A DNA stretch of 64,000 bases, from the IMG/VR virus record IMGVR_UViG_3300037725_000018, positions 124,001 through 188,000 of that record, one strand, 5' to 3'. Of this stretch, positions 13,748-52,585 are shown piece after piece (position 1 is the first letter of the stretch; each line of letters starts with the position of its first letter). The notes below the pieces were generated by a model that saw only the letters and a program-made list of their open reading frames with translations, searched no databases and was not told the DNA's origin. Made by a program: the position numbers and the translations under genes.

Positions 13748-13772
13748 AGGACTTCAAAGTATGAATTAAAAG

Positions 13773-35608: not shown

Positions 35609-35788
35609 ATGATTGTGCTTTACGAGTCTAGAAAAGAGTGGGGGGAAATCCGCGAATTTTCTGTTGGTCCCAACCCCACGATAGAGCTTCGGGGAGAAAC
35701 GTGCTCGATTGAAAACTTAGGTGATAACATTACAACCGTCAAATTCAAAAAAATTAAAATCAAGCGGGCCTTAAAAGAAATTTCATAA
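35609..35788 (+). CDS. Micro-protein family (MIVLYES)
   Basis: Family N-motif. Confidence 0.6.
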   Translation: MIVLYESRKEWGEIREFSVGPNPTIELRGETCSIENLGDNITTVKFKKIKIKRALKEIS

Positions 35789-35871
35789 AAAAGTAGGAAC
35801 CGGGCTTTATTCTCCCTGTTAAAGCAAACGGAAAAAGAGGGAACCCTTTTCACCAACGAACCCTGTTTGCT

Positions 35872-36153
35872 ATGAACGCCACGAAAGAAGAGATCCGCGA
35901 AAAGTTTTCTCTTCCGTCTGACAGTCGGGCAAGGAAGCTTCGGGACATGTTTTCGAAGCACGTCACGTATCTGGACAAGAGCCTAAACCGGGCTTGGAAG
36001 GGTCCGGTCGAAGCGGTTGTGCCGAAAGAGAAGGCTAAAGACATGCGGGAAGCAATGAGCTTCATCGGTGCTCATGTGGATAAGACCGAAAGCCTTCCGG
36101 GTGGCCGCGTTCGGCTTTACAGCCGGGGCTACTACGTTCACGTTGGGGCTTAA
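35872..36153 (+). CDS. Hypothetical protein
   Basis: Class A promoter at 35796; hairpin at 36188-36219. Confidence 0.75.
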   Translation: MNATKEEIREKFSLPSDSRARKLRDMFSKHVTYLDKSLNRAWKGPVEAVVPKEKAKDMREAMSFIGAHVDKTESLPGGRVRLYSRGYYVHVGA

Positions 36154-36310
36154 ATGAAGCGACAGCTTCCCATTCAAACCCGCAGGAAGGCCCACAGGGG
36201 GAAACCTCTTGTGGGCCTTTGCCATACCCTTTTCGGTTCCGAAAACTTCTTAGAAACAATTGTGTGGACAGGCAATATCTACCAGTAGACAAAGAAAAAT
36301 AACAAAGAAA

Positions 36311-36532
36311 ATGATTGCAGTTATAGTCTCGACGCCAAAAGACTACGGAGAAGCTTCAAAGCTTCGGATCTATCTTTCCGTTAATGACGTTTTTAAAGAA
36401 GGAAAAAAAGACTCCAAAGAAATTCAGGTTATTTCAACCCCAAATTTCACCCGAAAGCAAAACAACCAGATTGAAGAAAAGAGTTGGTTTAAAAATATAA
36501 GGTCTAAAAAAGAACAAGTAAAAAACCTTTAA
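36311..36532 (+). CDS. Micro-protein (MIAVIVST)
   Basis: Family N-motif. Confidence 0.6.
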   Translation: MIAVIVSTPKDYGEASKLRIYLSVNDVFKEGKKDSKEIQVISTPNFTRKQNNQIEEKSWFKNIRSKKEQVKNL

Positions 36533-36536
36533 CGGC

Positions 36537-36689
36537 ATGATCATCATACTTAGCGAAACAGAAGAAGAAGATTATAAAGTGGAAGAAGTATTTGAATATG
36601 GCCCCGCTTCTATGTCTTGGTATCTTACAGATGATGAAGTTTCGAGAGAAGAGATTAGACACATAAAAAAAGACCTAAAAACATGGTAG
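36537..36689 (+). CDS. Micro-protein (MIIILSE), 50 aa
   Basis: Manual translation. Confidence 0.6.
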   Translation: MIIILSETEEEDYKVEEVFEYGPASMSWYLTDDEVSREEIRHIKKDLKTW

Positions 36690-37015
36690 TTTTCTTTGAA
36701 TCAAAAACGGAATTTTCAAATGCGCTTTCGAACTCTACGTCCAAAAACACACTTCTTGATCTTTCGGTTCGCGTAAACGGTGTTAAGCTTTCGTACGCGG
36801 AACACGAAAAGACATACAAAAAACATGTAAGTCCCAAATCTTTAAAGTTAGCGCAGAAGCAGGGGACGGTATTTGGGCTTTCCGACGAAAAAAAGCGGCT
36901 TACTCTGTCCGGTGGAAAGCTTGTATACAATTCGGGTTCATTTGCACTTTCTTCTGCTTTGTTTTCAACGTTTAAGTCAATATCCGGCTCGCACAAAACT
37001 GGCAATATAATATAA
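36683..37015 (+). CDS. Micro-protein (MVVFFES)
   Basis: Family N-motif; VNG subfamily. Confidence 0.65.
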   Translation: MVVFFESKTEFSNALSNSTSKNTLLDLSVRVNGVKLSYAEHEKTYKKHVSPKSLKLAQKQGTVFGLSDEKKRLTLSGGKLVYNSGSFALSSALFSTFKSISGSHKTGNII

Positions 37016-37031
37016 CACAAGTTGAAAACCC

Positions 37032-37202
37032 ATGATTATCGTTGTGTCTGAAAATGAAAGAGATCGAAGAAGTCTTGTTGGCTTTCCTCTTCACAACAAG
37101 GGAGGATGCAAGCACGTACTAAACACAAAGCAATCTAAAGCCGCAAACTTGAAAAAGTCTATCGTGGCTAGAATTGAAATTGTGAACTTGCACGGTTGGT
37201 AA
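37032..37202 (+). CDS. Micro-protein (MIIVVSE), 56 aa
   Basis: Manual translation. Confidence 0.6.
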   Translation: MIIVVSENERDRRSLVGFPLHNKGGCKHVLNTKQSKAANLKKSIVARIEIVNLHGW

Positions 37203-37208
37203 AAGAAG

Positions 37209-37388
37209 ATGATTTTCATAATGTACGAAACAAAAAAAGAGCAGAGGCGTTCTTACATTAACGCAAATGGAGAAGGTTTTTGTTTTTTTGGTTGGGAGGG
37301 AATGAAACTTTTGCCGGAAACAAAACTTAAAAGAATTGTAATCGAAAGGTTCAGAGAAGCTAGAGTGAAAAATGGTCGTCATTTTTGA
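37209..37388 (+). CDS. Micro-protein (MIFIMYE), 59 aa
   Basis: Manual translation. Confidence 0.6.
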   Translation: MIFIMYETKKEQRRSYINANGEGFCFFGWEGMKLLPETKLKRIVIERFREARVKNGRHF

Positions 37389-37617
37389 AACAGAAAAAGA
37401 AGTCGTTGACGCAATTTCATATAAAAACGTTCCCGCAAAGTGGGAAGTCAACGGAAAACCAGTAGAGGCAAAAGAGGTTATCGTAATGCCAAATAACCTA
37501 ACAAAAAATCACTTTCCCGCCCACAAACAAATTGTGAAACGAAATCTTCACGAAAAGCAAGAAGACCTCTCGATTCTAAAAAAAGTTTGGTCGTTTGCAG
37601 CGTCAATCTTCAACTAA
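37372..37617 (+). CDS. Micro-protein (MVVIFET)
   Basis: Family N-motif; VNG subfamily. Confidence 0.65.
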   Translation: MVVIFETEKEVVDAISYKNVPAKWEVNGKPVEAKEVIVMPNNLTKNHFPAHKQIVKRNLHEKQEDLSILKKVWSFAASIFN

Positions 37618-37625
37618 AAATGCCC

Positions 37626-37799
37626 ATGCCCATAATCGTCGGAAAAAGAAAGGAGCTTAAAGAGGCTTACGTTATCCCAATGACACAAAGACAGTCCCGG
37701 ACCTACAAATGGTTTAAGCATTCTGAAGTAAGAAATATGGGAACTAAGATGGTCAAGGAGTTAATCAGAGAAATATCATCTGAACTTAAAAGAAATTGA
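37626..37799 (+). CDS. Micro-protein (MPIIVGK)
   Basis: Variant N-motif. Confidence 0.55.
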   Translation: MPIIVGKRKELKEAYVIPMTQRQSRTYKWFKHSEVRNMGTKMVKELIREISSELKRN

Positions 37800-37809
37800 A
37801 ACCCAAGTT

Positions 37810-37995
37810 ATGTTCATTGTATTTGAAAGCGAAAAAGAGCGAAAAGAAGCTGTAAACACCGACAAATCATCGGTTCGTTCATTTTGGATTGAGGAAGAAA
37901 TGATTTCAATTAAAAACGTCATGCGGGTTTACAGTTGGGACAACATGCGGCTCGGAAAGTCTCAGGCACGCAAAAAAGTAGCACATAGGCTTTAA
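37810..37995 (+). CDS. Micro-protein (MFIVFES)
   Basis: Family N-motif. Confidence 0.65.
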   Translation: MFIVFESEKERKEAVNTDKSSVRSFWIEEEMISIKNVMRVYSWDNMRLGKSQARKKVAHRL

Positions 37996-38002
37996 TAAGG
38001 AT

Positions 38003-38188
38003 ATGCAAATTATATTCGAGACGTACCTAAAATTTCAAGCTCACTCCACGCCGGAGCTTAGTTTTTCCGGCTTCAAGGTCGGGGAAGCAAGAGACGTGCC
38101 TTCCCGTTGCATCCATGTTAAAAACACAGACACGATCCGGTCTATAAAAAAGCGGCTTCGAAAAGGGCTCGCGCAAGGCAAAAATTGA
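38003..38188 (+). CDS. Micro-protein (MQIIFET)
   Basis: Family N-motif. Confidence 0.65.
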   Translation: MQIIFETYLKFQAHSTPELSFSGFKVGEARDVPSRCIHVKNTDTIRSIKKRLRKGLAQGKN

Positions 38189-38276
38189 CTTCCATATCGA
38201 GACCGGGTAGAGAAACGATTTCAAAAGACCTACCCCCCTTCAAATAACAAGTTCAATTGACCCCCCCCCCTTAAGG

Positions 38277-38438
38277 ATGGTTTTGATTGCACATTCGCAT
38301 AAAGAACTTCAAATTGCAGTTAGAATGTCACACGACCTTCTTCTTGTTCACGATTCGGTTTTCTTTCCCCGCTCTTCATACTGGATTCGAAACAAAGAAA
38401 ATATGCATCGGTTCATAAAAAGTGATTTGAAAGTGTAA
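38277..38438 (+). CDS. Micro-protein (MVLIAHS), 53 aa
   Basis: Manual translation. Confidence 0.55.
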   Translation: MVLIAHSHKELQIAVRMSHDLLLVHDSVFFPRSSYWIRNKENMHRFIKSDLKV

Positions 38439-38455
38439 AGATTAGTAGTAACATC

Positions 38456-38665
38456 ATGGTTGTTGTATATACAAAGAAAACATTAAGGAAGATAGAATCA
38501 AAGGTCGTGGAAAAGTTTTTAGAAGAAGATGAGGACGCTTTTATTATGCCAGTGGAGCTTCCGGTGTTGAACTACAAGACGCAGCGGAGCATTGTCCAAA
38601 ACGCGATTCAGTCTACGTCGTGGGAAGAATACACAAACCCTGAAATGCGACCTCAAAACATATGA
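38456..38665 (+). CDS. Micro-protein (MVVVYTK)
   Basis: Family N-motif. Confidence 0.6.
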   Translation: MVVVYTKKTLRKIESKVVEKFLEEDEDAFIMPVELPVLNYKTQRSIVQNAIQSTSWEEYTNPEMRPQNI

Positions 38666-38844
38666 TCATTATCCTTCCAGAAAACGAAAAAGAACACGGG
38701 GCAGCTCTTTGGCGTCGGTGGGACAAAAATCCCAAGATACTTGTCCTTCCATACCGAATGTCAAGTTTTCAAGGAGAAGGTGGGGCAGCCGTTTTCGGGA
38801 GGGTAAGGTTTCACGTAAAAGACAAACTAAGTAAAAAAGCATGA
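38662..38844 (+). CDS. Micro-protein (MIIILPE)
   Basis: Family N-motif; ATGA overlap. Confidence 0.65.
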   Translation: MIIILPENEKEHGAALWRRWDKNPKILVLPYRMSSFQGEGGAAVFGRVRFHVKDKLSKKA

Positions 38845-39035
38845 TGGTTTTGATCTTTCAAGATGAAGAGTAAAGAAGTAAGGTTCTTGAGCAGCCCGGA
38901 GCAACCTTTTTTTCAAAAGTCAAATGCCACGACAAGAACATTAGAATTAAAGAAACGTGTGAATTTCTTCAAGGCAGGCTAAGAAACTCTAAAAAGCTGT
39001 CTAAACTTTTGAGGCTAAAAATTAAAACGGCTTAA
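38841..39035 (+). pseudogene. Micro-protein with premature TAA (MMVLIFQDEE*RSKVLEQ...KIKTA*)
   Basis: In-frame TAA at 38871-38873; frame stays open to 39035. Confidence 0.65.
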
Positions 39036-39043
39036 TAGAAGAA

Positions 39044-39238
39044 ATGCAAATCATCTTCAACGACATAGACGAAATCAAATCGTGCATCGAAGAGTCAATA
39101 TATGCCAACTCGAAAACGCGCACCCTTAGAGGAACAAATGTTTCCATAAACGTTTGGGACATGTGGCACACCGATTATGTGCGAGCTAATGGAGCAGAGG
39201 TTATAAAAAAAGTTAGATCCAAATTGAAAGAAGAATGA
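39044..39238 (+). CDS. Micro-protein (MQIIFND)
   Basis: Family N-motif. Confidence 0.65.
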   Translation: MQIIFNDIDEIKSCIEESIYANSKTRTLRGTNVSINVWDMWHTDYVRANGAEVIKKVRSKLKEE

Positions 39239-39450
39239 TTATATACTTCGAACGTGGCGAAAAACAAAAAAGCCACCTGCGCGGCCTTTTTGGAAGGCAA
39301 AAGAAAACAGACCTTTCCTTCCACTTCGGAAAGATTGAAGACACAGACTGCTATTGGTATAACATTTCCGGAAACACAAAACGAAAAAGACCGGGTGAAG
39401 GTCTTAGAAGCAGAGAGCACTTAAAATTCATAACCGAAATTGCAATTTGA
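39235..39450 (+). CDS. Micro-protein (MIIYFER)
   Basis: Family N-motif; ATGA overlap. Confidence 0.65.
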   Translation: MIIYFERGEKQKSHLRGLFGRQKKTDLSFHFGKIEDTDCYWYNISGNTKRKRPGEGLRSREHLKFITEIAI

Positions 39451-39457
39451 AAACCCC

Positions 39458-39643
39458 ATGCATATACTTTTTGAGGACACACGCGAATTTAAAAAATACG
39501 ACGGGACGTTTTATTACTTCAACGGTGGGCCGGAAATTTACGCGCATGAAGCAAGTGTTTTGACATACAGACGCAAAAAACTTACATTAGACAAACAAAA
39601 AAGAAAGCGCGTAAAAAAGAGGCTCAAAAAAAACATCGCATAA
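39458..39643 (+). CDS. Micro-protein (MHILFED)
   Basis: Family N-motif. Confidence 0.65.
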   Translation: MHILFEDTREFKKYDGTFYYFNGGPEIYAHEASVLTYRRKKLTLDKQKRKRVKKRLKKNIA

Positions 39644-39662
39644 CGGCGGCAGCAGGCAAAAA

Positions 39663-39848
39663 ATGGTTATTATAGTATCGGAAGAAAACACAAAACAAAA
39701 AACGTGGACGTTTTACGATAAAAATTTTTTTTCAGATCACAAGACGTGGTTTATCCCCACGGAGTCTTATGAAATAGAGCAAGGAGAAAGGTTCCCAAGC
39801 GTCCGGAGAAAAGCGAATACATCCCATATCATCAAGTCTCTTTCTTAA
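39663..39848 (+). CDS. Micro-protein (MVIIVSE)
   Basis: Family N-motif. Confidence 0.65.
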   Translation: MVIIVSEENTKQKTWTFYDKNFFSDHKTWFIPTESYEIEQGERFPSVRRKANTSHIIKSLS

Positions 39849-39852
39849 ACCA

Positions 39853-40020
39853 GTGATTATAGCAATTCCAGAATCCAAATTTGAGTGGCAAGTTTTCTAT
39901 CAAGACTTACCTTTTAAAGATTTAAAAGTTGTCCCGGAACCCCGAATTTACGATAACTACATAGAAATGTCAAGAAAAAGAACGGTTCTTTCGATAATAA
40001 AGGAACAAACAACTTCTTGA
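39853..40020 (+). CDS. Micro-protein (GTG start, MIIAIPE), 55 aa
   Basis: Manual translation. Confidence 0.55.
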   Translation: MIIAIPESKFEWQVFYQDLPFKDLKVVPEPRIYDNYIEMSRKRTVLSIIKEQTTS

Positions 40021-40022
40021 AA

Positions 40023-40082
40023 ATGATCATCACGATTCCAGCGGAGAATAATAAAGAAAGAGAAAAATGGGAATGCTTGTAA
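40023..40082 (+). pseudogene. Truncated micro-protein remnant MIITIPAENNKEREKWECL*
   Basis: Family N-motif, only 19 aa. Confidence 0.45.
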
Positions 40083-40249
40083 TCTTTGAAAATTTTGAAG
40101 AAATGGACAAAGTTTCAAAACCGAAGGGAAAGTACGAGCTTGTCGGGGAAGCAAAAGTCCCCGCGTTCAACGTCCACGTCAAAAGAAACTTCAAACGCCC
40201 AAGCGTGTTTAGAAGAGAAATGAAAATAGCTGTGTTCTCTAAGTTGTAA
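40073..40249 (+). CDS. Micro-protein (MLVIFEN)
   Basis: Family N-motif. Confidence 0.65.
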   Translation: MLVIFENFEEMDKVSKPKGKYELVGEAKVPAFNVHVKRNFKRPSVFRREMKIAVFSKL

Positions 40250-40428
40250 GAGCAAAAGCAATAAGACAGCCATCCCGACCACTTTTCCTTGGACATGATA
40301 CAGACAAAGAGTATTACAACATCCGGTCACACAAACCCGAAAGCGGTTTATTAGTAGGTGGTTTGCATATAAACGGGGAAAAGCTTTCTAGCCATTGGAT
40401 ATATGTCAGGTGAGTGAATGGAAGAAAG

Positions 40429-40461
40429 CCCCACACAAGGCAAATAAAACCTCACGTGAGG
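40429..40461. repeat. CCCCACACAAGGC imperfect hairpin, copy 1
   Basis: Related copies at 41217 and 46867. Confidence 0.7.
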
Positions 40462-40788
40462 TAAAATATGGTTTTTATATTGAGACCGGGGCGAAAACCA
40501 TTTCATTTTTACCGGGGGTACCGATTATAGCAAGTTATTTTTACCCCCACCCCCCTGTAGAATGTACACAGCCTTGTAGTAGATGGTAGAATGTACATGT
40601 GAATTCAAAAAGCCGTTTCAAAACGAAATGCAAAAGCTTCAATTCAAGACAAAGCACATGTAGTTTTTACCGTTTGCAGTTTTGGCATGGAATTTGCCTT
40701 CTGCGTCAAAACAAGACGTGTAGCTTTTACAAGGGAGGTGGGCGTTGGCATACAGTTTGCTTTAAAAAACCATAAACAGATAATTGGC

Positions 40789-40950
40789 ATGATTGTTGTT
40801 ATCGAAAGAAGAGAAGACATAAACGGCTCCAGCCTTAAATTTTTTGATTCTGAAATAAGGCTAAAAGTAGGCAGGGCAGTTGTTCGTAGGTGGTGCCCGT
40901 CTGGGTGGCCTTTACGATACAAAAGAGAGTACATCCGAAAGCATATTTGA
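40789..40950 (+). CDS. Micro-protein (MIVVIER)
   Basis: Family N-motif. Confidence 0.6.
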   Translation: MIVVIERREDINGSSLKFFDSEIRLKVGRAVVRRWCPSGWPLRYKREYIRKHI

Positions 40951-40969
40951 AAACCAGTTGAAAAAAGAT

Positions 40970-41143
40970 ATGATCGTTATCCTTGTTGAAGAGAAGGCCA
41001 ATTCTTTTAGCGTCGAAGACTTTGAAAAAGAAGTTGCAGTTATCCCAAGTGCAAAGGCGTACGTCTCTCTTTCGGTTCTTTCAAATGTTCAAGGGCTAAA
41101 GATGCGGAGGCGACATGTGGATAATGCCATTCGAAAGCTTTAA
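40970..41143 (+). CDS. Micro-protein (MIVILVE)
   Basis: Family N-motif. Confidence 0.6.
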   Translation: MIVILVEEKANSFSVEDFEKEVAVIPSAKAYVSLSVLSNVQGLKMRRRHVDNAIRKL

Positions 41144-41216
41144 TAGAAGCCTCTGTCTTTTCTTCTAAGAAGTTTTTCATGTGTGCCCTTGCGGTGGGAT
41201 AGGCAAATAAAAAAAA

Positions 41217-41250
41217 CCCCACACAAGGCAAATTGGCGCCTCGCGTGGGG
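41217..41250. repeat. CCCCACACAAGGC imperfect hairpin, copy 2 (convergent junction, possible terminator)
   Basis: CCCCACACAAGGC-AAATTGGC-GCCTCGCGTGGGG. Confidence 0.75.
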
Positions 41251-41277
41251 AATTGGGTGCCCGAATGTGGCCGACGT

Positions 41278-41523
41278 TTACAGATTCATCGCCATAGCCG
41301 AAGCCAAGTGCTTCAAGAAGTGATGGATATCTCCGTTTTTGAAATCAATCTTTCGAATGATCCTTTCAATCCGTTTCCTCTCTTGTCCCCGCGTCTGTTT
41401 GATCTGTTCAATCACATTTGAAGCTTGGATGTAGTTGACGGTTCCGTTTTCAGACTCGACGGTGTAAGTGCGGGTAGTGTCAACGTCTGCTTCCTTGAAG
41501 TACGTCGTGATGAAGTCGTTCAT
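41278..41523 (-). CDS. Hypothetical protein (MNDFITTYF)
   Basis: Class A promoter at 41600. Confidence 0.75.
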   Translation of the reverse strand: MNDFITTYFKEADVDTTRTYTVESENGTVNYIQASNVIEQIKQTRGQERKRIERIIRKIDFKNGDIHHFLKHLASAMAMNL

Positions 41524-41627
41524 CGGCTTTTTGTTTTGTGAAAGAGTCTCCATTGTCACGTCTAACAACACAATTAAAAAACGAGCGCCCCCCAAGGATG
41601 TTCCCAAGGGAGGCGCTCGTCTTGGTT

Positions 41628-41897
41628 TTACCAATCCCAACTGTCCCAATTGTTTTCGGTTTCAAAAACCACTTCTCCGTCTTCGACTCGCTGAATAATG
41701 TTTTTGTTATACAACGTGTACGTTCTCATTCGCCCGTCAGAATACTTCATGACAAGCGAGTGGTCGGAAGGAAGAGTCTTCGTCTCCCGGCCTTCATTTT
41801 TGGAAAAACGAAAGTAATGCTTTGCTTCTTCTTTCCGGTAAAACACATTCAAGTGTTCATCGGAGAGAACAAAAAACGGGGCTTCGTAATCAAACAT
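41628..41897 (-). CDS. Hypothetical protein (MFDYEAPF)
   Basis: Class A promoter at 41966. Confidence 0.7.
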   Translation of the reverse strand: MFDYEAPFFVLSDEHLNVFYRKEEAKHYFRFSKNEGRETKTLPSDHSLVMKYSDGRMRTYTLYNKNIIQRVEDGEVVFETENNWDSWDW

Positions 41898-42013
41898 GTT
41901 TCTGTTTGCTTTTATGAAGTTTCCTCTCTTTAAGCCAGTGCAATAAACAAGCGCCCCCCAAGGGTGTTCCCAAGGAAGACGCTCGTTTTGGTTTTTCAAT
42001 TGCAACTTCCTTT

Positions 42014-42184
42014 TTACGAAGGAAGTGGAACTTCCGTCACGTTGGGTTCGCCATAGTTTTCTTCTAGCTCTTCAATCGAATCGTACCCGGCGTCGTCTAC
42101 GTAATACGCCAAAGCATCTTCTTTGCTTTCGGCGGCGTAGAGGCCCAACATGGTTCCGTTTGCGGAAATCTCAAATGCTTTCAT
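42014..42184 (-). CDS. Small acidic protein (MKAFEISANG)
   Basis: Class A promoter at 42248. Confidence 0.7.
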   Translation of the reverse strand: MKAFEISANGTMLGLYAAESKEDALAYYVDDAGYDSIEELEENYGEPNVTEVPLPS

Positions 42185-42237
42185 GAGCTTCGGTGGTTTT
42201 TGTTTTCTTTCCCTGTGCAACCTTGTAAACCCACAGC

Positions 42238-42510
42238 CTACGAGTATGTTTCACGAACGCACGTGAACGTTTCTTCCGGCCACGGGGGACCGGAGATTTC
42301 CCGAAGCTGCCTTCCGTCTTCATCAATCTCAAAGACTTCCACATCTTCGAGCTTCGCCTCTTCCCACGGGAACAGGTTTAGCTCCATGTGGGCTTGATTT
42401 CGAGCGTTGTCTACCGCCTTTTGTGGACTTGCACTTGACCGGGCATAGACAAACCCGTATCGGCCCGAGTCCTTGCCAGTTGCAACTGCCGATGCTTCGT
42501 AGGTAGCCAT
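42238..42510 (-). CDS. Hypothetical protein
   Basis: ATG ORF. Confidence 0.7.
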   Translation of the reverse strand: MATYEASAVATGKDSGRYGFVYARSSASPQKAVDNARNQAHMELNLFPWEEAKLEDVEVFEIDEDGRQLREISGPPWPEETFTCVRETYS

Positions 42511-42646
42511 TTGTTTCTTTTGTCTTTGTGAACAGGTTCTCTTTTCTAAGCCACTACAACAACAACAACAACAACAAACAAAAGGGAAGGGGAACTGCTC
42601 CCCTTCCCGTGTGAAGATTTGTTTAACTAGTGAAACTTAGCTTCAG

Positions 42647-42841
42647 TTAAGAAGAAGACTTAGGGTAGATGATTTCCGAACCAACAGTTCGGGCGTCTTC
42701 GTCTTCGTAGCGGTAGAGAACTTCCGCGTCTTCCCCAAGACGCTTTGCGTGGTTTATAGCCTCTACCTCCGAAAGATAAAACGCGGTGTCCGGGCCGTAG
42801 TTTCCATCGGGGGAAACAAGGTATTCTTCTGAAATCGTCAT
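42647..42841 (-). CDS. Small acidic protein (MTISEEY)
   Basis: ATG ORF. Confidence 0.65.
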   Translation of the reverse strand: MTISEEYLVSPDGNYGPDTAFYLSEVEAINHAKRLGEDAEVLYRYEDEDARTVGSEIIYPKSSS

Positions 42842-42894
42842 ATCGGTTTTTGTTGTTAACTGTCTGTCTTGAAGCTTTGAGTTTCCTGTTAACC

Positions 42895-43176
42895 TCACAC
42901 ACTTGCCCAATCGGGATCTTCCCCTTCACGGGTAATGTCTTCGGCAGAAAAGCTTCGGACCCGGTGAGGAAAGAAATACACCTTCATATTTTCCCCATCG
43001 ATAGAAGCGACGTATCCACCACTTCCTTCGGTGGCCTTGTCAAGTTGACGCCGCACCTCGTAGGATTGGGGAGTGTCGTCAAACTCGACGGTAATGGTTC
43101 CTTCTTCCTCAAGCTGGTGCCAGAACTCTTCAGTTGCCGGGTGCGGGTCTTCAACGTGAACGTGAATGTTATCCAT
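42895..43176 (-). CDS. Small acidic protein
   Basis: Class A promoter at 43251. Confidence 0.75.
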   Translation of the reverse strand: MDNIHVHVEDPHPATEEFWHQLEEEGTITVEFDDTPQSYEVRRQLDKATEGSGGYVASIDGENMKVYFFPHRVRSFSAEDITREGEDPDWASV

Positions 43177-43995
43177 AGGGTTAAGTGTTTGGGATGTTGC
43201 GGATTGTCTGCCGAAAAATGCGTGTGCTTAAAAAGGTGTTGGAAGATGAAGTTCCGTGAAGCTTGTGTGAAGTGTGAATACTCTGTGAAGAGGGAACACT
43301 TTGTTGGTTTGAAGGTTTAAGTTAGTGCAGGGGGAGGAATATCTTTTTTTGCGTAAGTAGATTCTGTGAAGTGGAATGAATATTGCTTCGGTAGCAAATT
43401 CCATTCCAACCCTTCCGGCAGGTGTTCATTCAATATTGATTTATGTTTCCTGTAGAGACTCAAGTAAACTTATTTTAGCCCCCAACCCTCTTAGACGCCG
43501 TTGAACGGGCTTTGGGCTTTTATTTGAATATTGAATATTGAATATTGAACGCCAAGTGCCAACCAACCTGCCTTCAGCGGCTACAGACGTAGATTCTATG
43601 TTTCTCGCTCGGGGTTTGGTAAACTTATTTATTGTTGGAACGGGTTTTGCTACCGTAGACATACAATAACACATCAAATACTATGCCACACCCCAAGGCA
43701 CATAGATCGCCTCTAAGCGGTTTAAGTGTTTGTAGGTATGTGGGGCAAGGCCATGTGGCGAAATCCACGCACACACGCGCACGTGCGCCCGTGAGGCTTG
43801 TCTTGATGTTAGCGGTGCAACGCTGTCCCCGCGTCTTTTGACACACGCTCCCTTGTGAGCTTAGGGACCTAAGTATGAGAAAAGATGCGGGGACGCTTTT
43901 CACGTGTCCCCGTTGACAGACGCCGAAGTTTTTTGATACACATTTGCCGGGTGGGAACAAACTTATAGTTTCCCCCGTTTTAGCGCCAAAAAAAG

Positions 43996-44169
43996 ATGAT
44001 CGTCGTTATAGACAAAAAAGAAAGAGAAGACTTCGCTGCAACCAAGTTTCACAAGTTCGTAAACGTCCCTCCGGGTATGAGAAAAGACGTGGGGTGTCTT
44101 CATAACTTAGAAGACGGGTCCGGGCACCTTCTTCGGTTTGCAAAAGTTTTAGTCAAGTCTTACTTGTGA
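43996..44169 (+). CDS. Micro-protein (MIVVIDK), 57 aa
   Basis: Manual translation. Confidence 0.6.
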   Translation: MIVVIDKKEREDFAATKFHKFVNVPPGMRKDVGCLHNLEDGSGHLLRFAKVLVKSYL

Positions 44170-44243
44170 AAGAAAAAGCTGACGTGCGTGGTCCCCGTAT
44201 ACAATTTTTATTAGCCAATGCCAATGTCAATTTTTATCCGTTT

Positions 44244-44456
44244 ATGGTTGTTCTTATTGAAACAAAAACAGAAGACGAAGAGTTTTACAATTACGTGTCC
44301 GGGATGCGGGTTTTGGTTTTGGGGACTTTTGAAACGGTCCCTTTATATCGAATACCGGATTTTGAAATTTTTAAGGTAGCCAAAACTGAAGGCTTCTGTG
44401 TAAAGGAGAATGGTCGGCTCACAATTCTTCATCACGGAATAGCAAAAGTGAGGTAA
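44244..44456 (+). CDS. Micro-protein (MVVLIET)
   Basis: Paralog of next ORF. Confidence 0.7.
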   Translation: MVVLIETKTEDEEFYNYVSGMRVLVLGTFETVPLYRIPDFEIFKVAKTEGFCVKENGRLTILHHGIAKVR

Positions 44457-44461
44457 AAAAG

Positions 44462-44665
44462 ATGGTTCTTGTTTTCGAAGACGAAACAGAAAAAGAAAGG
44501 TTTGACAAACAGGTGTCCGAAACGGGCGTGGGAGTGTTTGGCCTTTTTGAAACCCTTTCTTTGTATAAAGAAAAAGCATTTAAGGTTCTTCGGTTTGCCA
44601 AAAGAGAAGGGCTAATTACAAGAGAAGACGGGCGTCTCATTTTAGTTTACTATGGAGTAGAGTAA
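44462..44665 (+). CDS. Micro-protein (MVLVFED)
   Basis: Paralog of previous ORF. Confidence 0.7.
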   Translation: MVLVFEDETEKERFDKQVSETGVGVFGLFETLSLYKEKAFKVLRFAKREGLITREDGRLILVYYGVE

Positions 44666-44681
44666 AACGTAGGGAAAAAAG

Positions 44682-44906
44682 ATGGTTATTCTTGTTGAAA
44701 ACAAAAGAGAAAAAACCCCTTTGAAAAAAGCGTGTGGGGGAAGAGTTGAAGACGAATTTGAACTTTTAAAAGAGCGGATTCTGTTGCACGCGGGGCACTC
44801 GTCTCCGATGGATTTTCTAGTGTACATCAAAAAAAGGCTCCACTCTTGCCCAAGCACCGGAAGACTTACCTGCGACATAACGCCAATACGTAACAACAAA
44901 AAATAA
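44682..44906 (+). CDS. Micro-protein (MVILVEN)
   Basis: Family N-motif. Confidence 0.65.
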   Translation: MVILVENKREKTPLKKACGGRVEDEFELLKERILLHAGHSSPMDFLVYIKKRLHSCPSTGRLTCDITPIRNNKK

Positions 44907-44915
44907 CAGACAGTT

Positions 44916-45113
44916 GTGGTTGTTATCATTGAAGACTCGAAACTTGTTTCAGAAATTCAAGACTACTTCTCCGTCTGTTTAGAGGAAAATCTTGATGTGT
45001 ATGAGCAGGTTTGGCTTTGCCGTGTGGATAGCAGCAAGCCGGAATATTTGCGTTTTATGAAAAAACGCGGATTTGACAGGATAGAAGAGAACAAAAGAAT
45101 GATTTTTAAGTAA
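44916..45113 (+). CDS. Micro-protein (MVVIIED)
   Basis: Family N-motif. Confidence 0.65.
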   Translation: MVVIIEDSKLVSEIQDYFSVCLEENLDVYEQVWLCRVDSSKPEYLRFMKKRGFDRIEENKRMIFK

Positions 45114-45165
45114 GCATACGCAAGGGAAAAATTAGCTCCTTCATCAAAACTGCGTAAAGTGTGCA

Positions 45166-45351
45166 ATGATTGTTTTCGTTGTTGAAAGCACAGAAGGCAA
45201 GTCCGCGTTTTTTGATTTGACAAACAAAAACCGGAAAAACTTTGGAAGCGGCGTAAGCGTGGTTTTCTCTCATAAGTACGTCGGCTCCGGAACGGCCCGA
45301 GAATGCGCTTTGAAAGTCAAACAAAAGATCAAAAAATCCAAGCAAAAGTAA
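45166..45351 (+). CDS. Micro-protein (MIVFVVE)
   Basis: Family N-motif. Confidence 0.6.
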   Translation: MIVFVVESTEGKSAFFDLTNKNRKNFGSGVSVVFSHKYVGSGTARECALKVKQKIKKSKQK

Positions 45352-45357
45352 TGAGCC

Positions 45358-45543
45358 GTGGTTATCCTAATAGAAAGCAAAAAAGAGGAAAAAGAGCTTA
45401 ATAACTTAGTGAGGAGTTCTGGTTTTGAACTTGACTTTCTTGAAAGACTTCCTGCCTTTTGGCACGTGCCGGAACTTTTGCTGCGTGACCTGAAAACGGT
45501 AGGTTTTAAAACAGAACAAAGGCGATTAAAATTTAATCGGTAG
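45358..45543 (+). CDS. Micro-protein (MVILIES)
   Basis: Family N-motif. Confidence 0.65.
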   Translation: MVILIESKKEEKELNNLVRSSGFELDFLERLPAFWHVPELLLRDLKTVGFKTEQRRLKFNR

Positions 45544-45558
45544 TAACCGAATCAGCTA

Positions 45559-45753
45559 ATGATTGTCATTTTGAAAAACATACAGGAGGGCAGGCATTTA
45601 GAAAATGTTAAGGGGGTGGGTCCCAAAAGAGAAGAGGTCGTATACGAATATAGATATGGGCCACGCCTGCGGGTTCAAATCCTAAGAGATTGCAGAAAAG
45701 GGGCAAAAGAAGGTGGGGAGCGGCTGAAAATTCCGGGCCGAATACGTCAGTAA
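45559..45753 (+). CDS. Micro-protein (MIVILKN)
   Basis: Paralog of next ORF. Confidence 0.7.
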   Translation: MIVILKNIQEGRHLENVKGVGPKREEVVYEYRYGPRLRVQILRDCRKGAKEGGERLKIPGRIRQ

Positions 45754-45769
45754 AAACAGATATGTAAAT

Positions 45770-45970
45770 ATGATCGTCATTGCAAATAACTTAAATGAAG
45801 ACCGTTGGATAGTGGGACACCCGAATATCGAAAGAAAAGAAATTGCCTACGTTTACGTGTGGACACGGGAAGAGAGGACCCGTCTTTTAAAAGACTTCAG
45901 GCGGGGGATAAAAAAGAGTGGCAAAAGGCTAAAAATGCCCGATCACATGGAAACAAGTAAAAAATGGTAA
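45770..45970 (+). CDS. Micro-protein (MIVIANN)
   Basis: Paralog of previous ORF. Confidence 0.7.
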   Translation: MIVIANNLNEDRWIVGHPNIERKEIAYVYVWTREERTRLLKDFRRGIKKSGKRLKMPDHMETSKKW

Positions 45971-45981
45971 AAACGCTTCCC

Positions 45982-46173
45982 ATGATATTCATCTTCAAAG
46001 AGTTTGAGTACTCAAACAACATTGACTTCTTTAAAGAGACGATTATTTCAAGCGACGGGTTGGTAAAGTCCGGTTCTGTCGTTGCCGATTCTCCCGGAAC
46101 AATCCCTCTAACAAAGAGTTCATACAAAAAAATCAAAGAATACGTCAAAACCCGGTTGTCAAACAAACAGTGA
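45982..46173 (+). CDS. Micro-protein (MIFIFKE)
   Basis: Family N-motif. Confidence 0.6.
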   Translation: MIFIFKEFEYSNNIDFFKETIISSDGLVKSGSVVADSPGTIPLTKSSYKKIKEYVKTRLSNKQ

Positions 46174-46355
46174 TCATCATCGAAGAAAACATGTTTGAAC
46201 AGAAGCTAACGTTTCCCATTCGGCTTGCCCCCGAAGAACGAGTAAGCCGAAAAGACGCTTTCTTAAACGGGTGTATCTCTGCGCTTACTTTGCATAACCC
46301 AAGTGAAGGCTGGACGAAAAGGCGGCTTTGTTTAATCACCGAACGTTACCAATAA
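46170..46355 (+). CDS. Micro-protein (MIIIEEN, GTG start)
   Basis: GTGA overlap. Confidence 0.6.
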   Translation: MIIIEENMFEQKLTFPIRLAPEERVSRKDAFLNGCISALTLHNPSEGWTKRRLCLITERYQ

Positions 46356-46374
46356 CGAAACCCTTTGAAAAGAT

Positions 46375-46572
46375 ATGGTCGTTTGCTTTGAAAACGAAAA
46401 TGAACTTGTTTCCAATACAACGATTCTTTTCGGGCGCAAGTCCGTAAACGGAATCATTCTTGACCCTGAAGAAATTTGTATAGTCAAAAGACCGGATAAT
46501 ATCCATGCCCAAGTTGAAAAAAGCTTTTCGACCTGTCGCCTCACCTGTTTTGTAAAAAGTTCACGCACATAA
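46375..46572 (+). CDS. Micro-protein (MVVCFEN)
   Basis: VNG subfamily. Confidence 0.65.
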   Translation: MVVCFENENELVSNTTILFGRKSVNGIILDPEEICIVKRPDNIHAQVEKSFSTCRLTCFVKSSRT

Positions 46573-46583
46573 AAACCGGACTC

Positions 46584-46784
46584 ATGGTTGTCTATTTTGA
46601 AAAAAGAACGGAGTTTCTAAACCATTCACAATTCACAAATCGATTTCGAACAACAATAACCGTTAACGGGCAGGTTCTTGTCAATTGCGAATATATCGTC
46701 TCGCCCAATAAAAAAGCGCCCCTTCAAATAAAAGAAAAGGACGTTCCTTTGTATCCGGGAACGCGCCTTGTTTTCGTTTTTTAA
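46584..46784 (+). CDS. Micro-protein (MVVYFEK)
   Basis: VNG subfamily. Confidence 0.65.
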   Translation: MVVYFEKRTEFLNHSQFTNRFRTTITVNGQVLVNCEYIVSPNKKAPLQIKEKDVPLYPGTRLVFVF

Positions 46785-46866: not shown

Positions 46867-46900
46867 CCCCACACAAGGCGTCCATTTGCCTCATGTGGGG
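46867..46900. repeat. CCCCACACAAGGC imperfect hairpin, copy 3 (convergent junction, possible terminator)
   Basis: CCCCACACAAGGC-GTCCATTT-GCCTCATGTGGGG. Confidence 0.75.
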
Positions 46901-46928
46901 CCTCTTTTGTTTATGTGTTGGGGGGGGA

Positions 46929-47408
46929 TTACAAAAGCCTTCTTAGGGCTCGAAGAAGCGCCCCGCGAAAGTAGTTTCCGCTTTGCCGGGGGTCTCCGTC
47001 TCCGTAGGATCGGTACTTAACAAGCCCCCTACGCCGAAGTGCCCTCTTTGTTGCCGTTGGGTTTGCTGAAGTGACAAGCGGTTTGGTCGGGTCGTCTGCG
47101 TGAATGACGGTTGCGCGAATCACCTCCTTCATGGTTTCGGAAAGCTCTTCGGTGGACTGAAGGCGTGCAAGCTCGACCATTGACTTGCAATCCTCCGGGT
47201 CCCACATCCGATACCAACCGTCCGCTAAGTTGCGTGCAGGGTTAATGTCAAGAAACTCCGCAAGCCGATCAAGAGCCTCCTTGACCTCCTTTTCGCTTAT
47301 GTTAACACCATCGGCATTTAAAGCCATGTAAACGTCATGGGCGGTGAAGGCTTGCCCGTCCTCGTATTCGTTTTTCACCGTACTTGCAGTTTTCAAAATT
47401 ACGTCCAT
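46929..47408 (-). CDS. Hypothetical protein, possibly winged-helix DNA-binding
   Basis: FTAHDVY..ISEKEVKEAL; ATKRALRRRGLV; class A promoter at 47484. Confidence 0.7.
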   Translation of the reverse strand: MDVILKTASTVKNEYEDGQAFTAHDVYMALNADGVNISEKEVKEALDRLAEFLDINPARNLADGWYRMWDPEDCKSMVELARLQSTEELSETMKEVIRATVIHADDPTKPLVTSANPTATKRALRRRGLVKYRSYGDGDPRQSGNYFRGALLRALRRLL

Positions 47409-47524
47409 CGTCTCTTTTGTTTGTTTGTTGGAAAGGACTTCCCTCTCTGTTTCGTGTGCTTAAAATAGAAAAGCCCGTGGACAGTTCCACGGGCCGTGTG
47501 AAGCGTTTGTTAACAAGTGATTTT

Positions 47525-47785
47525 TTAAGAAAGGTCCCACGTGATCGATTCAACCGCATCAGCCTTATTTCGGACACTTTCCAAATCCGAATGCACTTGA
47601 ATCATCTTTTTGCGCTGGAAGGCAAGACCGGCCTTCCCATCAATTTGAATGTACGCCATTGCGACGTTTGCGGTTTTTTCCGGGTCGTAGTATTCGGGGT
47701 CCCCGTAAGAGTGTCTTCCTCGCTCTCGAAGCCGGGACTCGATCTCTTCTTGAATTTTCGAAAGCGCGTCTTCTACGATGCTCAT
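47525..47785 (-). CDS. Hypothetical protein
   Basis: ATG ORF. Confidence 0.7.
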   Translation of the reverse strand: MSIVEDALSKIQEEIESRLRERGRHSYGDPEYYDPEKTANVAMAYIQIDGKAGLAFQRKKMIQVHSDLESVRNKADAVESITWDLS

Positions 47786-47818
47786 GGGCTTTTGGTTTTG
47801 GTTTGTGAAAATTCGGCT

Positions 47819-48028
47819 TTAAGAGAAAGGATCTCGAAGATAGTCGTACCGGATATCGAAGTATGCCATTTTCTTCGTGTCAGTTACCCCGACGATGTTT
47901 CCGGTATCTTCGTCCTTTACGTGCCACTCGCTTAGGCTTTTTCGGACTTCAAAAGACCGACCGTCTTCTCGTTTTGCGCGGTAGCGGCCCCGCTCGATCT
48001 TGCTTGTTTCAATTTCAAACGTGTCCAT
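47819..48028 (-). CDS. Hypothetical protein
   Basis: Class A promoter at 48105. Confidence 0.7.
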   Translation of the reverse strand: MDTFEIETSKIERGRYRAKREDGRSFEVRKSLSEWHVKDEDTGNIVGVTDTKKMAYFDIRYDYLRDPFS

Positions 48029-48152
48029 TTTTCAAGCCTTGTTTTATCGTTTGAAAACGACCTCCCCTTTCTTGCGTGTATATAAACTGGTGGCCCACTG
48101 GACGGTTCCAGTGGGCCACATGAAGATTCGGTAAAATAAAGCCCGTAGCCTG

Positions 48153-52121: not shown

Positions 52122-52298
52122 ATGATTTTTATTATCACCGAAGACCGAAACGAGTTTTTCGAAGCTTGTGGCATGTACCAACACAGGCACGCGCCAAGTG
52201 CTCTTGCCCAAGTGCTTCCGGACCACGTTGAAATCGCTTCCCTGCCATACAGAAACAAGTTTGCAATCAAAAAACACCTTTCAAAAACCCCAAAGTAA
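52122..52298 (+). CDS. Micro-protein (MIFIITE), 58 aa
   Basis: Manual translation. Confidence 0.6.
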   Translation: MIFIITEDRNEFFEACGMYQHRHAPSALAQVLPDHVEIASLPYRNKFAIKKHLSKTPK

Positions 52299-52300
52299 AC

Positions 52301-52585
52301 ATGTACGTAATAATTAGCGCCGAAGAAAAACGTAAGCTTTCAAAACAAAACTTCCTATCCGGCCTAGAGTGGAGGCTGGACGTGCCTTCCTCAATTCGCG
52401 TAGTAAGAAATTTAAAGATAAACAGACAAAGAATCAAAGAAACCAAATCTGACATAGCAAGGCATTACCTCCGAAAAATGAAAACAGATAGAACTTGGAT
52501 CACCGGAAGTTTAAAGGACAAAGAGGCGCTAGAGATCATTCAAGGCAAAAAGTTAAAAGACTGTCATGATCATTATTTTGTATAG
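52301..52585 (+). CDS. Micro-protein (MYVIISAEE)
   Basis: Family N-motif. Confidence 0.6.
   Translation: MYVIISAEEKRKLSKQNFLSGLEWRLDVPSSIRVVRNLKINRQRIKETKSDIARHYLRKMKTDRTWITGSLKDKEALEIIQGKKLKDCHDHYFV

What the first reader, a model, noticed from the sequence alone, without database searches (positions are those of the whole stretch)
38841..46784. Birth-and-death signatures inside the micro-protein arrays
Seen: neighbours that remain alignable along their length (44244 GTFETVPLY..FKVAKTEG..KENGRL vs 44462 GLFETLSLY..LRFAKREG..REDGRL; 45559 LRDCRKGAKEGGERLKIP vs 45770 LKDFRRGIKKSGKRLKMP). A dispersed FE..E...VNG subfamily occurs at 36683, 37372, 46375 and 46584. One full-length member is broken by a single TAA at 38871, and a 19-aa stub sits at 40023. 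Inference: the arrays grow by tandem duplication with rapid divergence and loss, as expected of an arms-race repertoire, and this supports the ORFs being real genes.
Basis: partly seen in the sequence, partly recalled or inferred. Interest (0 to 1): 0.6.

Follow-up and report, generated by a model that had tools for sequence, protein, structure and literature searches.

The report
Micro-protein gene arrays with gene turnover
An uncultivated 223-kb T4-like jumbo phage from tidal-flat sediment carries two arrays of about 34 real genes for roughly 60-residue proteins that share little beyond a short N-terminal motif, and comparison with a sister strain shows individual genes being lost by a nonsense mutation and by small deletions.

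Summary
The window is part of a 223,357-bp T4-like jumbo phage. It holds two co-directional arrays (35609-41143 and 43996-46784) of about 34 genes for 50-110-residue proteins. These start M-[IVLF]x4-E-x3-E and mostly end in a basic helix.

A sister strain at about 84% nucleotide identity keeps the frames. Differences fall 3rd>1st>2nd codon position, and pooled dN/dS is 0.25-0.30, so these are real genes under purifying selection.

Gene content differs at six loci:
- The TAA at 38871 is a GAA-to-TAA nonsense mutation. It is present in the window and four other assemblies, and the orthologue is intact.
- The 40023 stub is the remnant of a 341-nt deletion that removed two genes.
- One copy of a tandem pair is missing at 40789.
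- One 64-residue gene is replaced.
- 45770 is deleted in the sister strain.

Four adjacent paralogue pairs show tandem duplication, but every pair is at most 49% identical, so all duplications predate the strain split. Only losses are observed directly.

Outside a few subfamilies, similarity stops at the first 12 residues. No relatives exist outside this phage lineage. Function is unknown, and the arms-race reading is plausible but untested.

The parts
35609..41143 (+). Array 1. About 21 intact, tightly packed small genes (50-110 residues) with the M-[IVLF]4-E start, plus one pseudogene and one stub. A probable further member starts at 36311.
   Evidence: ORF list, start contexts and JGI gene calls. 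Pooled dN/dS against the sister strain is 0.25.
43996..46784 (+). Array 2: 13 small genes of the same kind.
   Evidence: Pooled dN/dS against L082 is 0.30.
38841..39035 (+). A 64-codon member broken by TAA at 38871-38873 (codon 11). The orthologue in L093 (1660-1854) and L094 is intact and has GAA there.
   Evidence: The same 45-mer containing the TAA is found in L088, L089, L090 and L091. dN/dS of the broken copy against the intact orthologue is 0.17, so the inactivation is recent.
40023..40082 (+). A 19-codon stub. It is the N-terminal remnant of a 58-residue gene that is intact in the sister strain (L093 2851-3027).
40042..40062 (.). Deletion junction. These 21 nt stand where the sister strain has 362 nt (L093 2870-3231). 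That stretch holds the rest of the 58-residue gene and nearly all of a 68-residue gene (L093 3024-3230).
   Evidence: blastn segment ends and the alignment.
39853..40020 (+). Surviving tandem paralogue of the gene reduced to the stub. It is 36% identical to L093 2851-3027 (E 1e-9).
40250..40420 (.). Replaced segment. About 170 nt here stand against 485 unalignable nt in the sister strain (L093 3437-3922), which encode a 64-residue family member (L093 3459-3653). The direction of the change is unknown.
40789..40950 (+). Single gene in the window where the sister strain has two tandem copies (L093 4291-4452 and 4464-4625). The two copies are 49% identical to each other. The window gene is 62% identical to copy 2 and 43% identical to copy 1.
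44244..44665 (+). Adjacent paralogue pair 44244-44456 and 44462-44665, 41% identical.
44916..45113 (+). Third member of the 44244 subfamily. It aligns over its full length.
   Evidence: Alignment A2.
45358..45543 (+). Fourth member of the 44244 subfamily.
   Evidence: phmmer E 2e-5 against 44244 and alignment A2.
45559..45970 (+). Adjacent paralogue pair 45559-45753 and 45770-45970, 37% identical. In the sister strain 45770 is deleted apart from about 9 N-terminal and 8 C-terminal codons. These are fused in frame to the next gene (L082 1960-2208, 82 residues).
36683..37015 (+). Member of the dispersed 'VNG' subfamily, together with 37372-37617, 46375-46572 and 46584-46784.
   Evidence: Support is weak to moderate.
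37372..37617 (+). 'VNG' subfamily member. Its orthologue is intact in L093.
46375..46784 (+). Two adjacent 'VNG' subfamily members (46375-46572 and 46584-46784).
41217..41250 (.). G+C-rich hairpin with a T-run on the minus strand, between the end of array 1 and the convergent minus-strand genes. Related copies lie at 40429-40461 and 46868-46901, the latter at the end of array 2.

Best explanation
**What it is.** The arrays encode a lineage-specific set of small, mostly basic proteins (median 61 residues, median pI 9.3). They sit in the accessory, hyperplastic part of a T4-like jumbo myovirus genome.

**What is shown**
1. The ORFs are translated genes under purifying but relaxed selection.
2. 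They share an N-terminal module, M, four hydrophobic residues, Glu, x3, Glu. It is conserved at the amino-acid level with free synonymous codon choice, and it is absent from the phage's large proteins.
3. Several neighbours are full-length paralogues, so tandem duplication made part of the arrays.
4. Gene content turns over quickly between two strains, through nonsense mutation and small deletions. At least one deletion removes exactly one gene unit.

**What is inferred**
- The whole set descends from one ancestral gene. The members keep a hydrophobic first strand, an acidic helix and a basic C-terminal helix as a scaffold, while the middle diverges beyond recognition.
- Each array runs in one direction, with gene spacing of 0-20 nt over most of its length. 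The arrays lie on the strand opposite the structural genes and end at hairpins. I therefore read them as operon-like, probably early, transcription units.
- The products are most likely cytoplasmic host-interaction proteins for host take-over or anti-defence. Each paralogue would bind a different host target or target variant. Loss of a copy would be tolerated when its target is absent from the local host population.
For: **Real genes**
- Codon-position differences from the sister strain are 12.9%, 8.4% and 21.0%, against 13% in intergenic sequence.
- dN/dS per gene is 0.08-0.54. Pooled values are 0.25 and 0.30.
- Frames are conserved at about 84% nucleotide identity.

**Motif**
- 47 small ORFs carry it against 4 in the control, and 0 of 92 large ORFs.
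- Codons 2-5 use ATT/ATC/ATA, GTT/GTC/GTA/GTG and TTT/TTC freely.
- In leave-one-out profiles, 27 of 31 members rank in the top 4 of 200 shuffles.

**Duplication**
- Adjacent paralogue pairs and the four-member A2 subfamily.
- Neighbour permutation test, p = 0.0018.

**Loss**
- document the nonsense mutation and the deletions.

**Lineage-specific**
- No Pfam or PHROG match.
- An exhaustive profile search of 1.84 billion representatives returned only the phage's own four clusters.
- No motif enrichment in a relative with 45% terminase identity.

**Relaxed constraint**
- Terminase omega is 0.03, against 0.25-0.30 in the arrays.

**Charge pattern**
- Net charge is -1.1 over the first 15 residues and +3.5 over the last 20.

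**Accessory-region context**
- The phage has T4-type head, portal, terminase, prohead protease and baseplate genes.
- A neighbouring two-gene module is present or absent between direct copies of a stem-loop element. This matches T4-type hyperplastic regions as described in PMC2839356.
Against: - With the first 12 residues removed, only 6 of 31 members still match the family profile better than shuffles. Single descent of the whole set is therefore not demonstrated.
- Both structure predictions are low-confidence (pLDDT 65 and 55), so a common fold is not shown.
- There are no expression data. No holder run is on record as RNA.
- No promoter could be assigned.
- No positive selection was detected or testable.
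- No defence-related neighbour or known anti-defence homologue was found.
- All detectable duplications are old.
Confidence: 0.6

Rival explanations
1. The shared N-terminus is a leader rather than part of a fold. Like the capsid-targeting sequence of T-even internal proteins (Ip), it would direct otherwise unrelated small basic proteins into the prohead. The T4-type prohead protease would cut it off after Glu, and the proteins would be injected with the DNA to disarm host defences.
For: - The genome encodes a gp21-type prohead protease (PF03420, 107 bits).
- 26 of 31 members have a [LIVFM]-x-E motif ending at residue 5-10. This fits the Glu-directed cleavage logo of gp21; the review gives LIE for gp21's own N-terminal site (PMC9026906).
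- T4 Ip1-3 share nothing but an N-terminal leader, and T-even Ip loci are a genomic hotspot of diverse injected anti-defence proteins (PMC12373910). [quoted passage not shown]
- Here too, similarity mostly ends after about 12 residues.
Against: - The same phage has a different and better leader candidate. At least six proteins in or near the head-gene cluster start with a basic helical leader ending in I-I-R-E-E.
- The micro-protein arrays lie on the opposite strand from the structural genes.
- The presumed leader would be only 6-7 residues and does not resemble the 10-residue T4 sequence.
- More than 30 different cargo species would be unprecedented.
- The narrow length range (50-74 residues for 29 of 31 members) suggests a common domain.
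Confidence: 0.15
2. The ORFs are mostly unrelated accessory genes gathered by modular shuffling. The similar N-termini would arise by convergence under an expression constraint, such as translation initiation without a Shine-Dalgarno sequence, or translational coupling in packed operons.
For: - The genome lacks Shine-Dalgarno sequences (6 of 92 large ORFs) and has A-rich leaders.
- The motif codons are A+T-rich.
- Similarity beyond residue 12 is absent for most members.
- Recombination between repeated stem-loop elements does operate next door.
Against: - None of 92 large genes of the same genome carries the motif, although they face the same initiation constraint.
- A run of hydrophobic residues followed by Glu is far more specific than A+T richness. 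Lys and Asn codons would serve equally well.
- The length, the charge polarity and the basic C-terminal helix are also shared.
- Several subfamilies are clearly homologous along their whole length.
Confidence: 0.1
3. The broken member and the content differences are artefacts: an assembly or sequencing error at 38871, chimeric contigs, or stop-codon recoding.
For: Metagenome assemblies can contain errors. A poly-C tract nearby does vary in length between assemblies.
Against: - The TAA-bearing 45-mer is identical in the window and four further assemblies, three from JGI samples and one Logan run.
- The sister-strain state is seen in two independent contigs for array 1 (L093, L094) and six for array 2 (L082-L087).
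- Logan contigs of two further runs show both strains.
- Long ORFs, up to 1956 residues, are open under the standard code.
- None of the 42 tRNAs is an ochre suppressor.
Confidence: 0.03

Closest known systems
Hyperplastic regions (HPRs) of T4-type phages, with PeSL-mediated modular shuffling (Arbiol et al. 2010, PMC2839356; Comeau et al. 2014, PMC4122927)
   Same: - The phage has T4-type core genes.
- Small non-essential ORFan genes cluster between conserved blocks.
- Insertions, deletions and replacements distinguish close relatives.
- One neighbouring two-gene module (47521-48051) lies between direct copies of a stem-loop element, and the relative has one copy of that element and no module.
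   Different: - Described HPRs hold mostly unrelated ORFans. Here more than 30 genes share one N-terminal motif, and several are tandem paralogues.
- Most indels inside the arrays are not flanked by stem-loop cassettes.
- No sigma-70-type early promoter could be assigned.
Internal-protein (Ip) loci of T-even phages: injected anti-restriction proteins with a capsid-targeting leader (PMC12373910; PMC9026906)
   Same: - Small basic proteins that share only a short N-terminal sequence.
- A variable locus between related phages.
- A gp21-type protease is present in the genome.
- A hydrophobic-x-Glu motif lies near the N-terminus.
   Different: - The motif is a hydrophobic run, not the amphipathic 10-residue T4 leader.
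- A distinct leader ending in I-I-R-E-E marks the head-cluster proteins of this phage.
- There are tens of copies rather than 3-10.
- Packaging, cleavage and injection are all untested.
Birth-and-death multigene families and the accordion model of large DNA viruses (for example PMC4468942; poxvirus gene amplification, from my own knowledge)
   Same: - Tandem paralogues, pseudogenes and lineage-specific loss.
- Purifying selection on the retained copies.
   Different: - No recent amplification is seen, because no paralogue pair is near-identical.
- The units are about 200 nt each.
- The host is bacterial and the selective agent is unknown.
Anti-CRISPR and anti-defence gene islands of phages (from my own knowledge)
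   Same: Runs of very small, fast-evolving ORFan genes with patchy presence between relatives.
   Different: - No member matches a known family.
- No associated helix-turn-helix regulator gene was found among the neighbours scanned.
- Members of such islands are not usually paralogues of one another.

Membership tests
Birth-and-death multigene family | Several paralogous copies, some in tandem | tested here: met
   Four adjacent paralogue pairs (36-49% identity) and a four-member subfamily. Neighbour permutation p = 0.0018.
Birth-and-death multigene family | Pseudogenes and gene remnants within the arrays | tested here: met
   Nonsense copy at 38841-39035, the stub at 40023, and the fused remnant of 45770 in L082.
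Birth-and-death multigene family | Copy number and content differ between close lineages | tested here: met
   Six loci differ out of about 36 compared, at dS of roughly 0.3-0.5.
Birth-and-death multigene family | Recent births: young duplicates or lineage-specific gains | tested here: not met
   All paralogue pairs are at most 49% identical and older than the strain split. No gain could be polarised without an outgroup.
Birth-and-death multigene family | All members descend from one ancestor | tested here: inconclusive
   The family profile recognises 27 of 31 members at full length, but only 6 of 31 once residues 1-12 are removed. The structure models are too poor to compare.
T4-type hyperplastic region | Phage has the T4-type core (head, portal, terminase, gp21-type protease, baseplate wedge) | tested here: met
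   PHROG matches 138, 213, 2 and 219, and PF03420.
T4-type hyperplastic region | Indels between relatives are bounded by repeated promoter/stem-loop cassettes | tested here: inconclusive
   Met for the module 47521-48051. One array replacement ends at a hairpin element at 40422. The other array indels have no such flanks, and promoter function is unknown.
T-even internal proteins (Ip) | N-terminal capsid-targeting sequence shared with other head-internal proteins of the same phage | tested here: not met
   Proteins of the head cluster share a different leader ending in I-I-R-E-E. None carries M-[IVLF]4-E.
T-even internal proteins (Ip) | Glu-directed cleavage site for a gp21-type protease near the N-terminus | tested here: inconclusive
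   The protease gene is present and [LIVFM]-x-E ends at residue 5-10 in 26 of 31 members. Cleavage itself is not testable here.
T-even internal proteins (Ip) | Protein is packaged in the capsid and injected | not testable with these tools
   This needs virion proteomics. The phage is uncultivated.
Known protein families (Pfam, PHROGs) | Significant profile match | tested here: not met
   No family matched more than one of 31 members. The best E values were 0.04 (Pfam) and 0.0055 (PHROGs).

The most novel reading that the evidence does not exclude
The M-[IVLF]4-E N-terminus is a new kind of sorting or processing tag, for packaging, export or timed degradation. It would let this jumbo phage deploy a swappable repertoire of 30-47 micro-effectors, an Ip-like system an order of magnitude larger than in T4. 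Each cargo would be matched to a host defence variant, and copies would be gained and lost as host populations change.
Probability: 0.15. Interest if true: 0.8.

Novelty: new variant of a known kind. Interest (0 to 1): 0.5.

Why it matters
Phage genomes are full of tiny ORFs that are routinely doubted or ignored. This case has two natural haplotypes, so several things can be shown rather than assumed. More than 30 such ORFs are real, selected genes. Part of the set arose by tandem duplication. Individual copies are being lost at a measurable rate: 6 of about 36 loci differ at dS of roughly 0.3-0.5.

The result is a defined, lineage-restricted family with a conserved handle, the N-terminal motif, and a variable body. 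That is a tractable entry point for asking what phage micro-proteins bind, and whether large phages keep effector repertoires the way large eukaryotic viruses do. The closest known comparison I identified is the accessory region of T4-type phages, which the cited descriptions present as holding mostly genes without known homologues rather than one expanded family.

Tried and rejected
- **Family scans.** Pfam and PHROG scans of all 31 members gave nothing.
- **Word-index search.** The search with the family alignment found only the phage's own proteins and the sister-strain variant.
- **Exhaustive profile search.** The 44244 subfamily returned only its own four clusters.
- **IMG/VR and metagenome scans.** Scans with single members found nothing. 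The sister strain was reached instead through exact-protein look-ups.
- **Phage collection.** Near-identity DNA search of the GenBank phage collection gave no match.
- **Structure.** Two AlphaFold jobs gave pLDDT 65 and 55. The Foldseek result against viral models was therefore meaningless, with best E of 0.87. ESM Atlas look-alikes all scored below 0.9 or had TM below 0.6.
- **Homodimer prediction for 44462.** No verdict, score 0.00. This is not evidence either way.
- **Family profile in five related phage records.** No match. A motif count in one complete relative (terminase 45% identical) showed no enrichment, 16 against 12 in the control.
- **Promoter assignment.**
  - Sigma-70-like sites were only slightly above shuffles.
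  - The T4 late motif TATAAATA was not enriched.
  - The Bacteroidota-type TTTG/TAnnTTTG pattern was at the chance level.
- **Stop-codon recoding or suppression of the TAA.** Rejected. The standard code gives long ORFs, and there is no suppressor tRNA.
- **Read mapping for copy-number variation.** Only Logan contigs were available. They show two co-occurring strains but cannot give copy number.

Full report
**Context.** The window is bases 124001-188000 of a 223,357-bp virus record that CheckV rates as complete. The genome encodes a T4-type major head protein, portal, large terminase and baseplate wedge, and a gp21-type prohead protease (PF03420, 107 bits). It also encodes a ClpC-like ATPase, an RNA ligase and a CobS/CobT-like pair, and 42 tRNAs plus a tmRNA. 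Public runs that hold the sequence are all tidal-flat metagenomes. Shine-Dalgarno sequences are essentially absent, at 6 of 92 large ORFs, and leaders are A-rich. The nearest terminase outside the population is 93% identical, and the next ones are 49% or less.

**The observation.** On the plus strand, two runs of tightly packed small ORFs stand out: 35609-41143 and 43996-46784. Within each run most neighbouring genes lie 0-20 nt apart, often with ATGA overlaps. Array 1 has three longer gaps, the largest about 540 nt at 40250-40788. Six minus-strand genes separate the two runs.
- Thirty-one clear members have a median length of 61 residues. 29 of the 31 are between 50 and 74 residues.
- They start with M, four hydrophobic residues, then Glu at position 6 or 7, and usually Glu at position 10.
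- Most end in a basic helix of the type h-K-K-R-L.
- Median pI is 9.3. The first 15 residues are net acidic and the last 20 net basic.

Every specific item in the finding is present:
- The pairs 44244/44462 and 45559/45770 (E 1e-14 and 1e-10).
- The weaker dispersed 'VNG' set.
- The in-frame TAA at 38871 within an otherwise open 64-codon frame.
- The 19-codon stub at 40023.

**Are they genes?** Exact-protein look-ups recovered contigs of the same strain (L088-L092, 99.98-100% identical). They also recovered contigs of a sister strain at about 82-90% nucleotide identity: L082-L087 for array 2, and L093 and L094 for array 1. Logan contigs of two other runs show both strains side by side.
- Across the arrays, the two strains differ at 12.9%, 8.4% and 21.0% of first, second and third codon positions, and at 13% of intergenic positions.
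- Nei-Gojobori dN/dS per gene is 0.08-0.54, with pooled values of 0.25 (array 1) and 0.30 (array 2).
- The terminase, compared with its 93%-identical relative, gives 0.03.

The ORFs are therefore coding and under purifying selection, but roughly ten times more relaxed than a core gene. The caveat is that the terminase figure comes from a different, more distant pair with dS near saturation. dS varies from 0.06 to 1.09 between neighbouring genes, which points to mosaic allelic exchange.

**Is it one family?**
- The motif marks 47 small ORFs genome-wide against 4 in a reversed-sequence control.
- It marks none of the 92 ORFs of 200 residues or more.
- It is encoded with freely varying synonymous codons. 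Selection therefore acts on the peptide rather than on a nucleotide signal.
- Leave-one-out profiles recognise 27 of 31 members better than all but 4 or fewer of 200 shuffles.
- After removal of the first 12 residues, only 6 of 31 are still recognised.

Full-length homology is demonstrable for the following subfamilies:
- {44244, 44462, 44916, 45358}
- {45559, 45770}
- {39853 and a sister-strain gene}
- {40789 and two sister-strain copies}
- {38003, 40073}, more weakly
- the 'VNG' four, more weakly

Common descent of the whole set is a reasonable inference, not a result.

**Turnover.** Six loci differ in content between the two strains.
1. **38871.** The window has GAG-TAA-AGA where L093 and L094 have AAG-GAA-AGA. 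The TAA 45-mer is identical in the window and four further assemblies. The broken copy still shows omega 0.17 against its intact 64-residue orthologue. This is a fresh nonsense mutation, not an error.
2. **The 40023 stub.** It keeps the first 19 nt of a 58-residue gene that is intact in the sister strain. Twenty-one nt in the window replace 362 nt there. The deletion also removes a 68-residue member.
3. **The lost 58-residue gene.** It was a tandem paralogue of 39853 (36% identity).
4. **40250-40420.** This stretch replaces 485 unalignable nt that encode a 64-residue member in the sister strain. The direction of the change is unknown.
5. **40789.** It is single in the window but duplicated in tandem in the sister strain.
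   - The two copies are 49% identical, which is older than the strain split.
   - The missing unit spans exactly start codon to start codon.
   - This fits unequal exchange between the conserved 5' ends.
6. **45770.** In the sister strain it is deleted. About 9 N-terminal and 8 C-terminal codons remain and are fused in frame to the next gene.

Where remnants allow the direction to be read, every event is a loss. No young duplicate exists.

**What the proteins do.** I found no homologue and no reliable fold.
- No Pfam or PHROG match.
- No match in the word-index search.
- No match in an exhaustive profile search of 1.84 billion representatives.
- No match in five related phage records.
- No usable structure model.
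- A homodimer prediction gave no verdict.

The arrangement suggests operon-like units of accessory genes. The genes are co-directional and packed, they lie on the strand opposite the structural genes, and the arrays end at hairpins that also close the convergent minus-strand genes (41217-41250 and 46868-46901). I commit to host-interaction proteins for take-over or anti-defence, built on a shared scaffold, as the most likely function. This step is inferred, not shown.

**The Ip analogy.** T-even internal proteins share only an N-terminal capsid-targeting leader. The leader is removed by gp21 after Glu. The proteins are injected and block specific restriction enzymes. [quoted passage not shown] This phage has the protease, and 26 of 31 members have hydrophobic-x-Glu ending at residue 5-10. 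However, proteins in and around its head-gene cluster share a different leader, basic and helical and ending in I-I-R-E-E. That leader is the better capsid-targeting candidate. The micro-protein arrays also lie on the other strand. I therefore keep the Ip-like reading as a rival at about 0.15.

**Comparison with known systems.** The region behaves like a T4-type hyperplastic region. Next to array 2, a two-gene module (47521-48051) lies between direct copies of a roughly 100-nt stem-loop element. The sister strain has one copy of that element and no module. This is the pattern described for PeSL-mediated shuffling (PMC2839356). What differs from the cited descriptions is that one motif-sharing set of more than 30 genes dominates the region, rather than the largely unrelated genes those descriptions report. 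I did not survey other phage genomes for comparable families. I rate it a new variant of a known kind.

**Limits.**
- Only two lineages are available, and there is no outgroup.
- No RNA or protein data exist.
- The phage and its host are uncultivated.
- Read data were available only as contigs.

Noticed in passing
window 38261-38270: The longest G/C homopolymer in the genome, a poly-C tract 6 nt upstream of the start codon at 38277. It is C10 in the window, C11 in L088 and L090, and C12 in L089, although these assemblies are otherwise 99.98-100% identical. In the sister strain the tract is interrupted (CCCCACCCCC). It could be a slippage-prone tract or an assembly artefact.
   Followed up: partly
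window 47405-47510 and 48028-48130: Direct copies of a roughly 100-nt element with a GGCCCGTGGA...TCCACGGGCC stem-loop flank two small minus-strand genes (47525-47785 and 47819-48028). The sister strain (L082 3425-3560) has one copy of the element and lacks both genes. This is the pattern described for PeSL cassettes of T4-type phages.
   Followed up: partly
G000:C1 4304-5053, 27455-27784, 28028-28588, 28633-28923, 33038-33337, 33880-34437 (all minus strand, outside the window): Six proteins in or near the head-gene cluster share an N-terminal leader of the form (R/K)-K-L-K-R-I-I-R-E-E-V. It is a candidate capsid-targeting sequence with a Glu-directed cleavage site for the gp21-type protease encoded at 32309-33007.
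   Followed up: partly
window 41576-41629 and 41942-41995: Two 54-nt copies, 89% identical, of a hairpin followed by a T-run on the minus strand. Each lies just after a small minus-strand gene, so they look like repeated terminators. The second copy sits inside the longest ORF call of 41628-42005, whose true start is probably further downstream.
   Followed up: no
window 38160-38275 and 40422-40560: A roughly 110-nt intergenic element occurs twice inside array 1, sharing CAAGGCAAA, ATAT(C/T)GAGACCGG and a C-rich end. It may divide the array into sub-units. Only these two copies exist in the genome.
   Followed up: partly
window 42556-42558: An (ACA)n repeat differs by one unit between the window and L088.
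   Followed up: no
window 1327-1743, 1884-1956, 13772-13847; whole genome: The phage encodes a tmRNA (Rfam 91 bits) and 42 tRNAs. One tRNA-like gene has an odd two-base anticodon call (G000 97719-97792). No suppressor tRNA is present.
   Followed up: partly
window 36957-37103 and 39078-39187: Within otherwise alignable genes, the sister strain has short stretches that are replaced or hyper-diverged. One is 160 different letters, and one is a same-length diverged block in the middle of gene 39044. dS between neighbouring genes ranges from 0.06 to 1.09, which suggests mosaic allelic exchange.
   Followed up: partly
window 52122-52298 and 52566-52724; G000 17984-22319, 86944-87634, 108672-109817, 216623-216994: Further small ORFs with the same M-[IVLF]4-E start lie outside the two arrays, on both strands. 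Several sit in small clusters.
   Followed up: no
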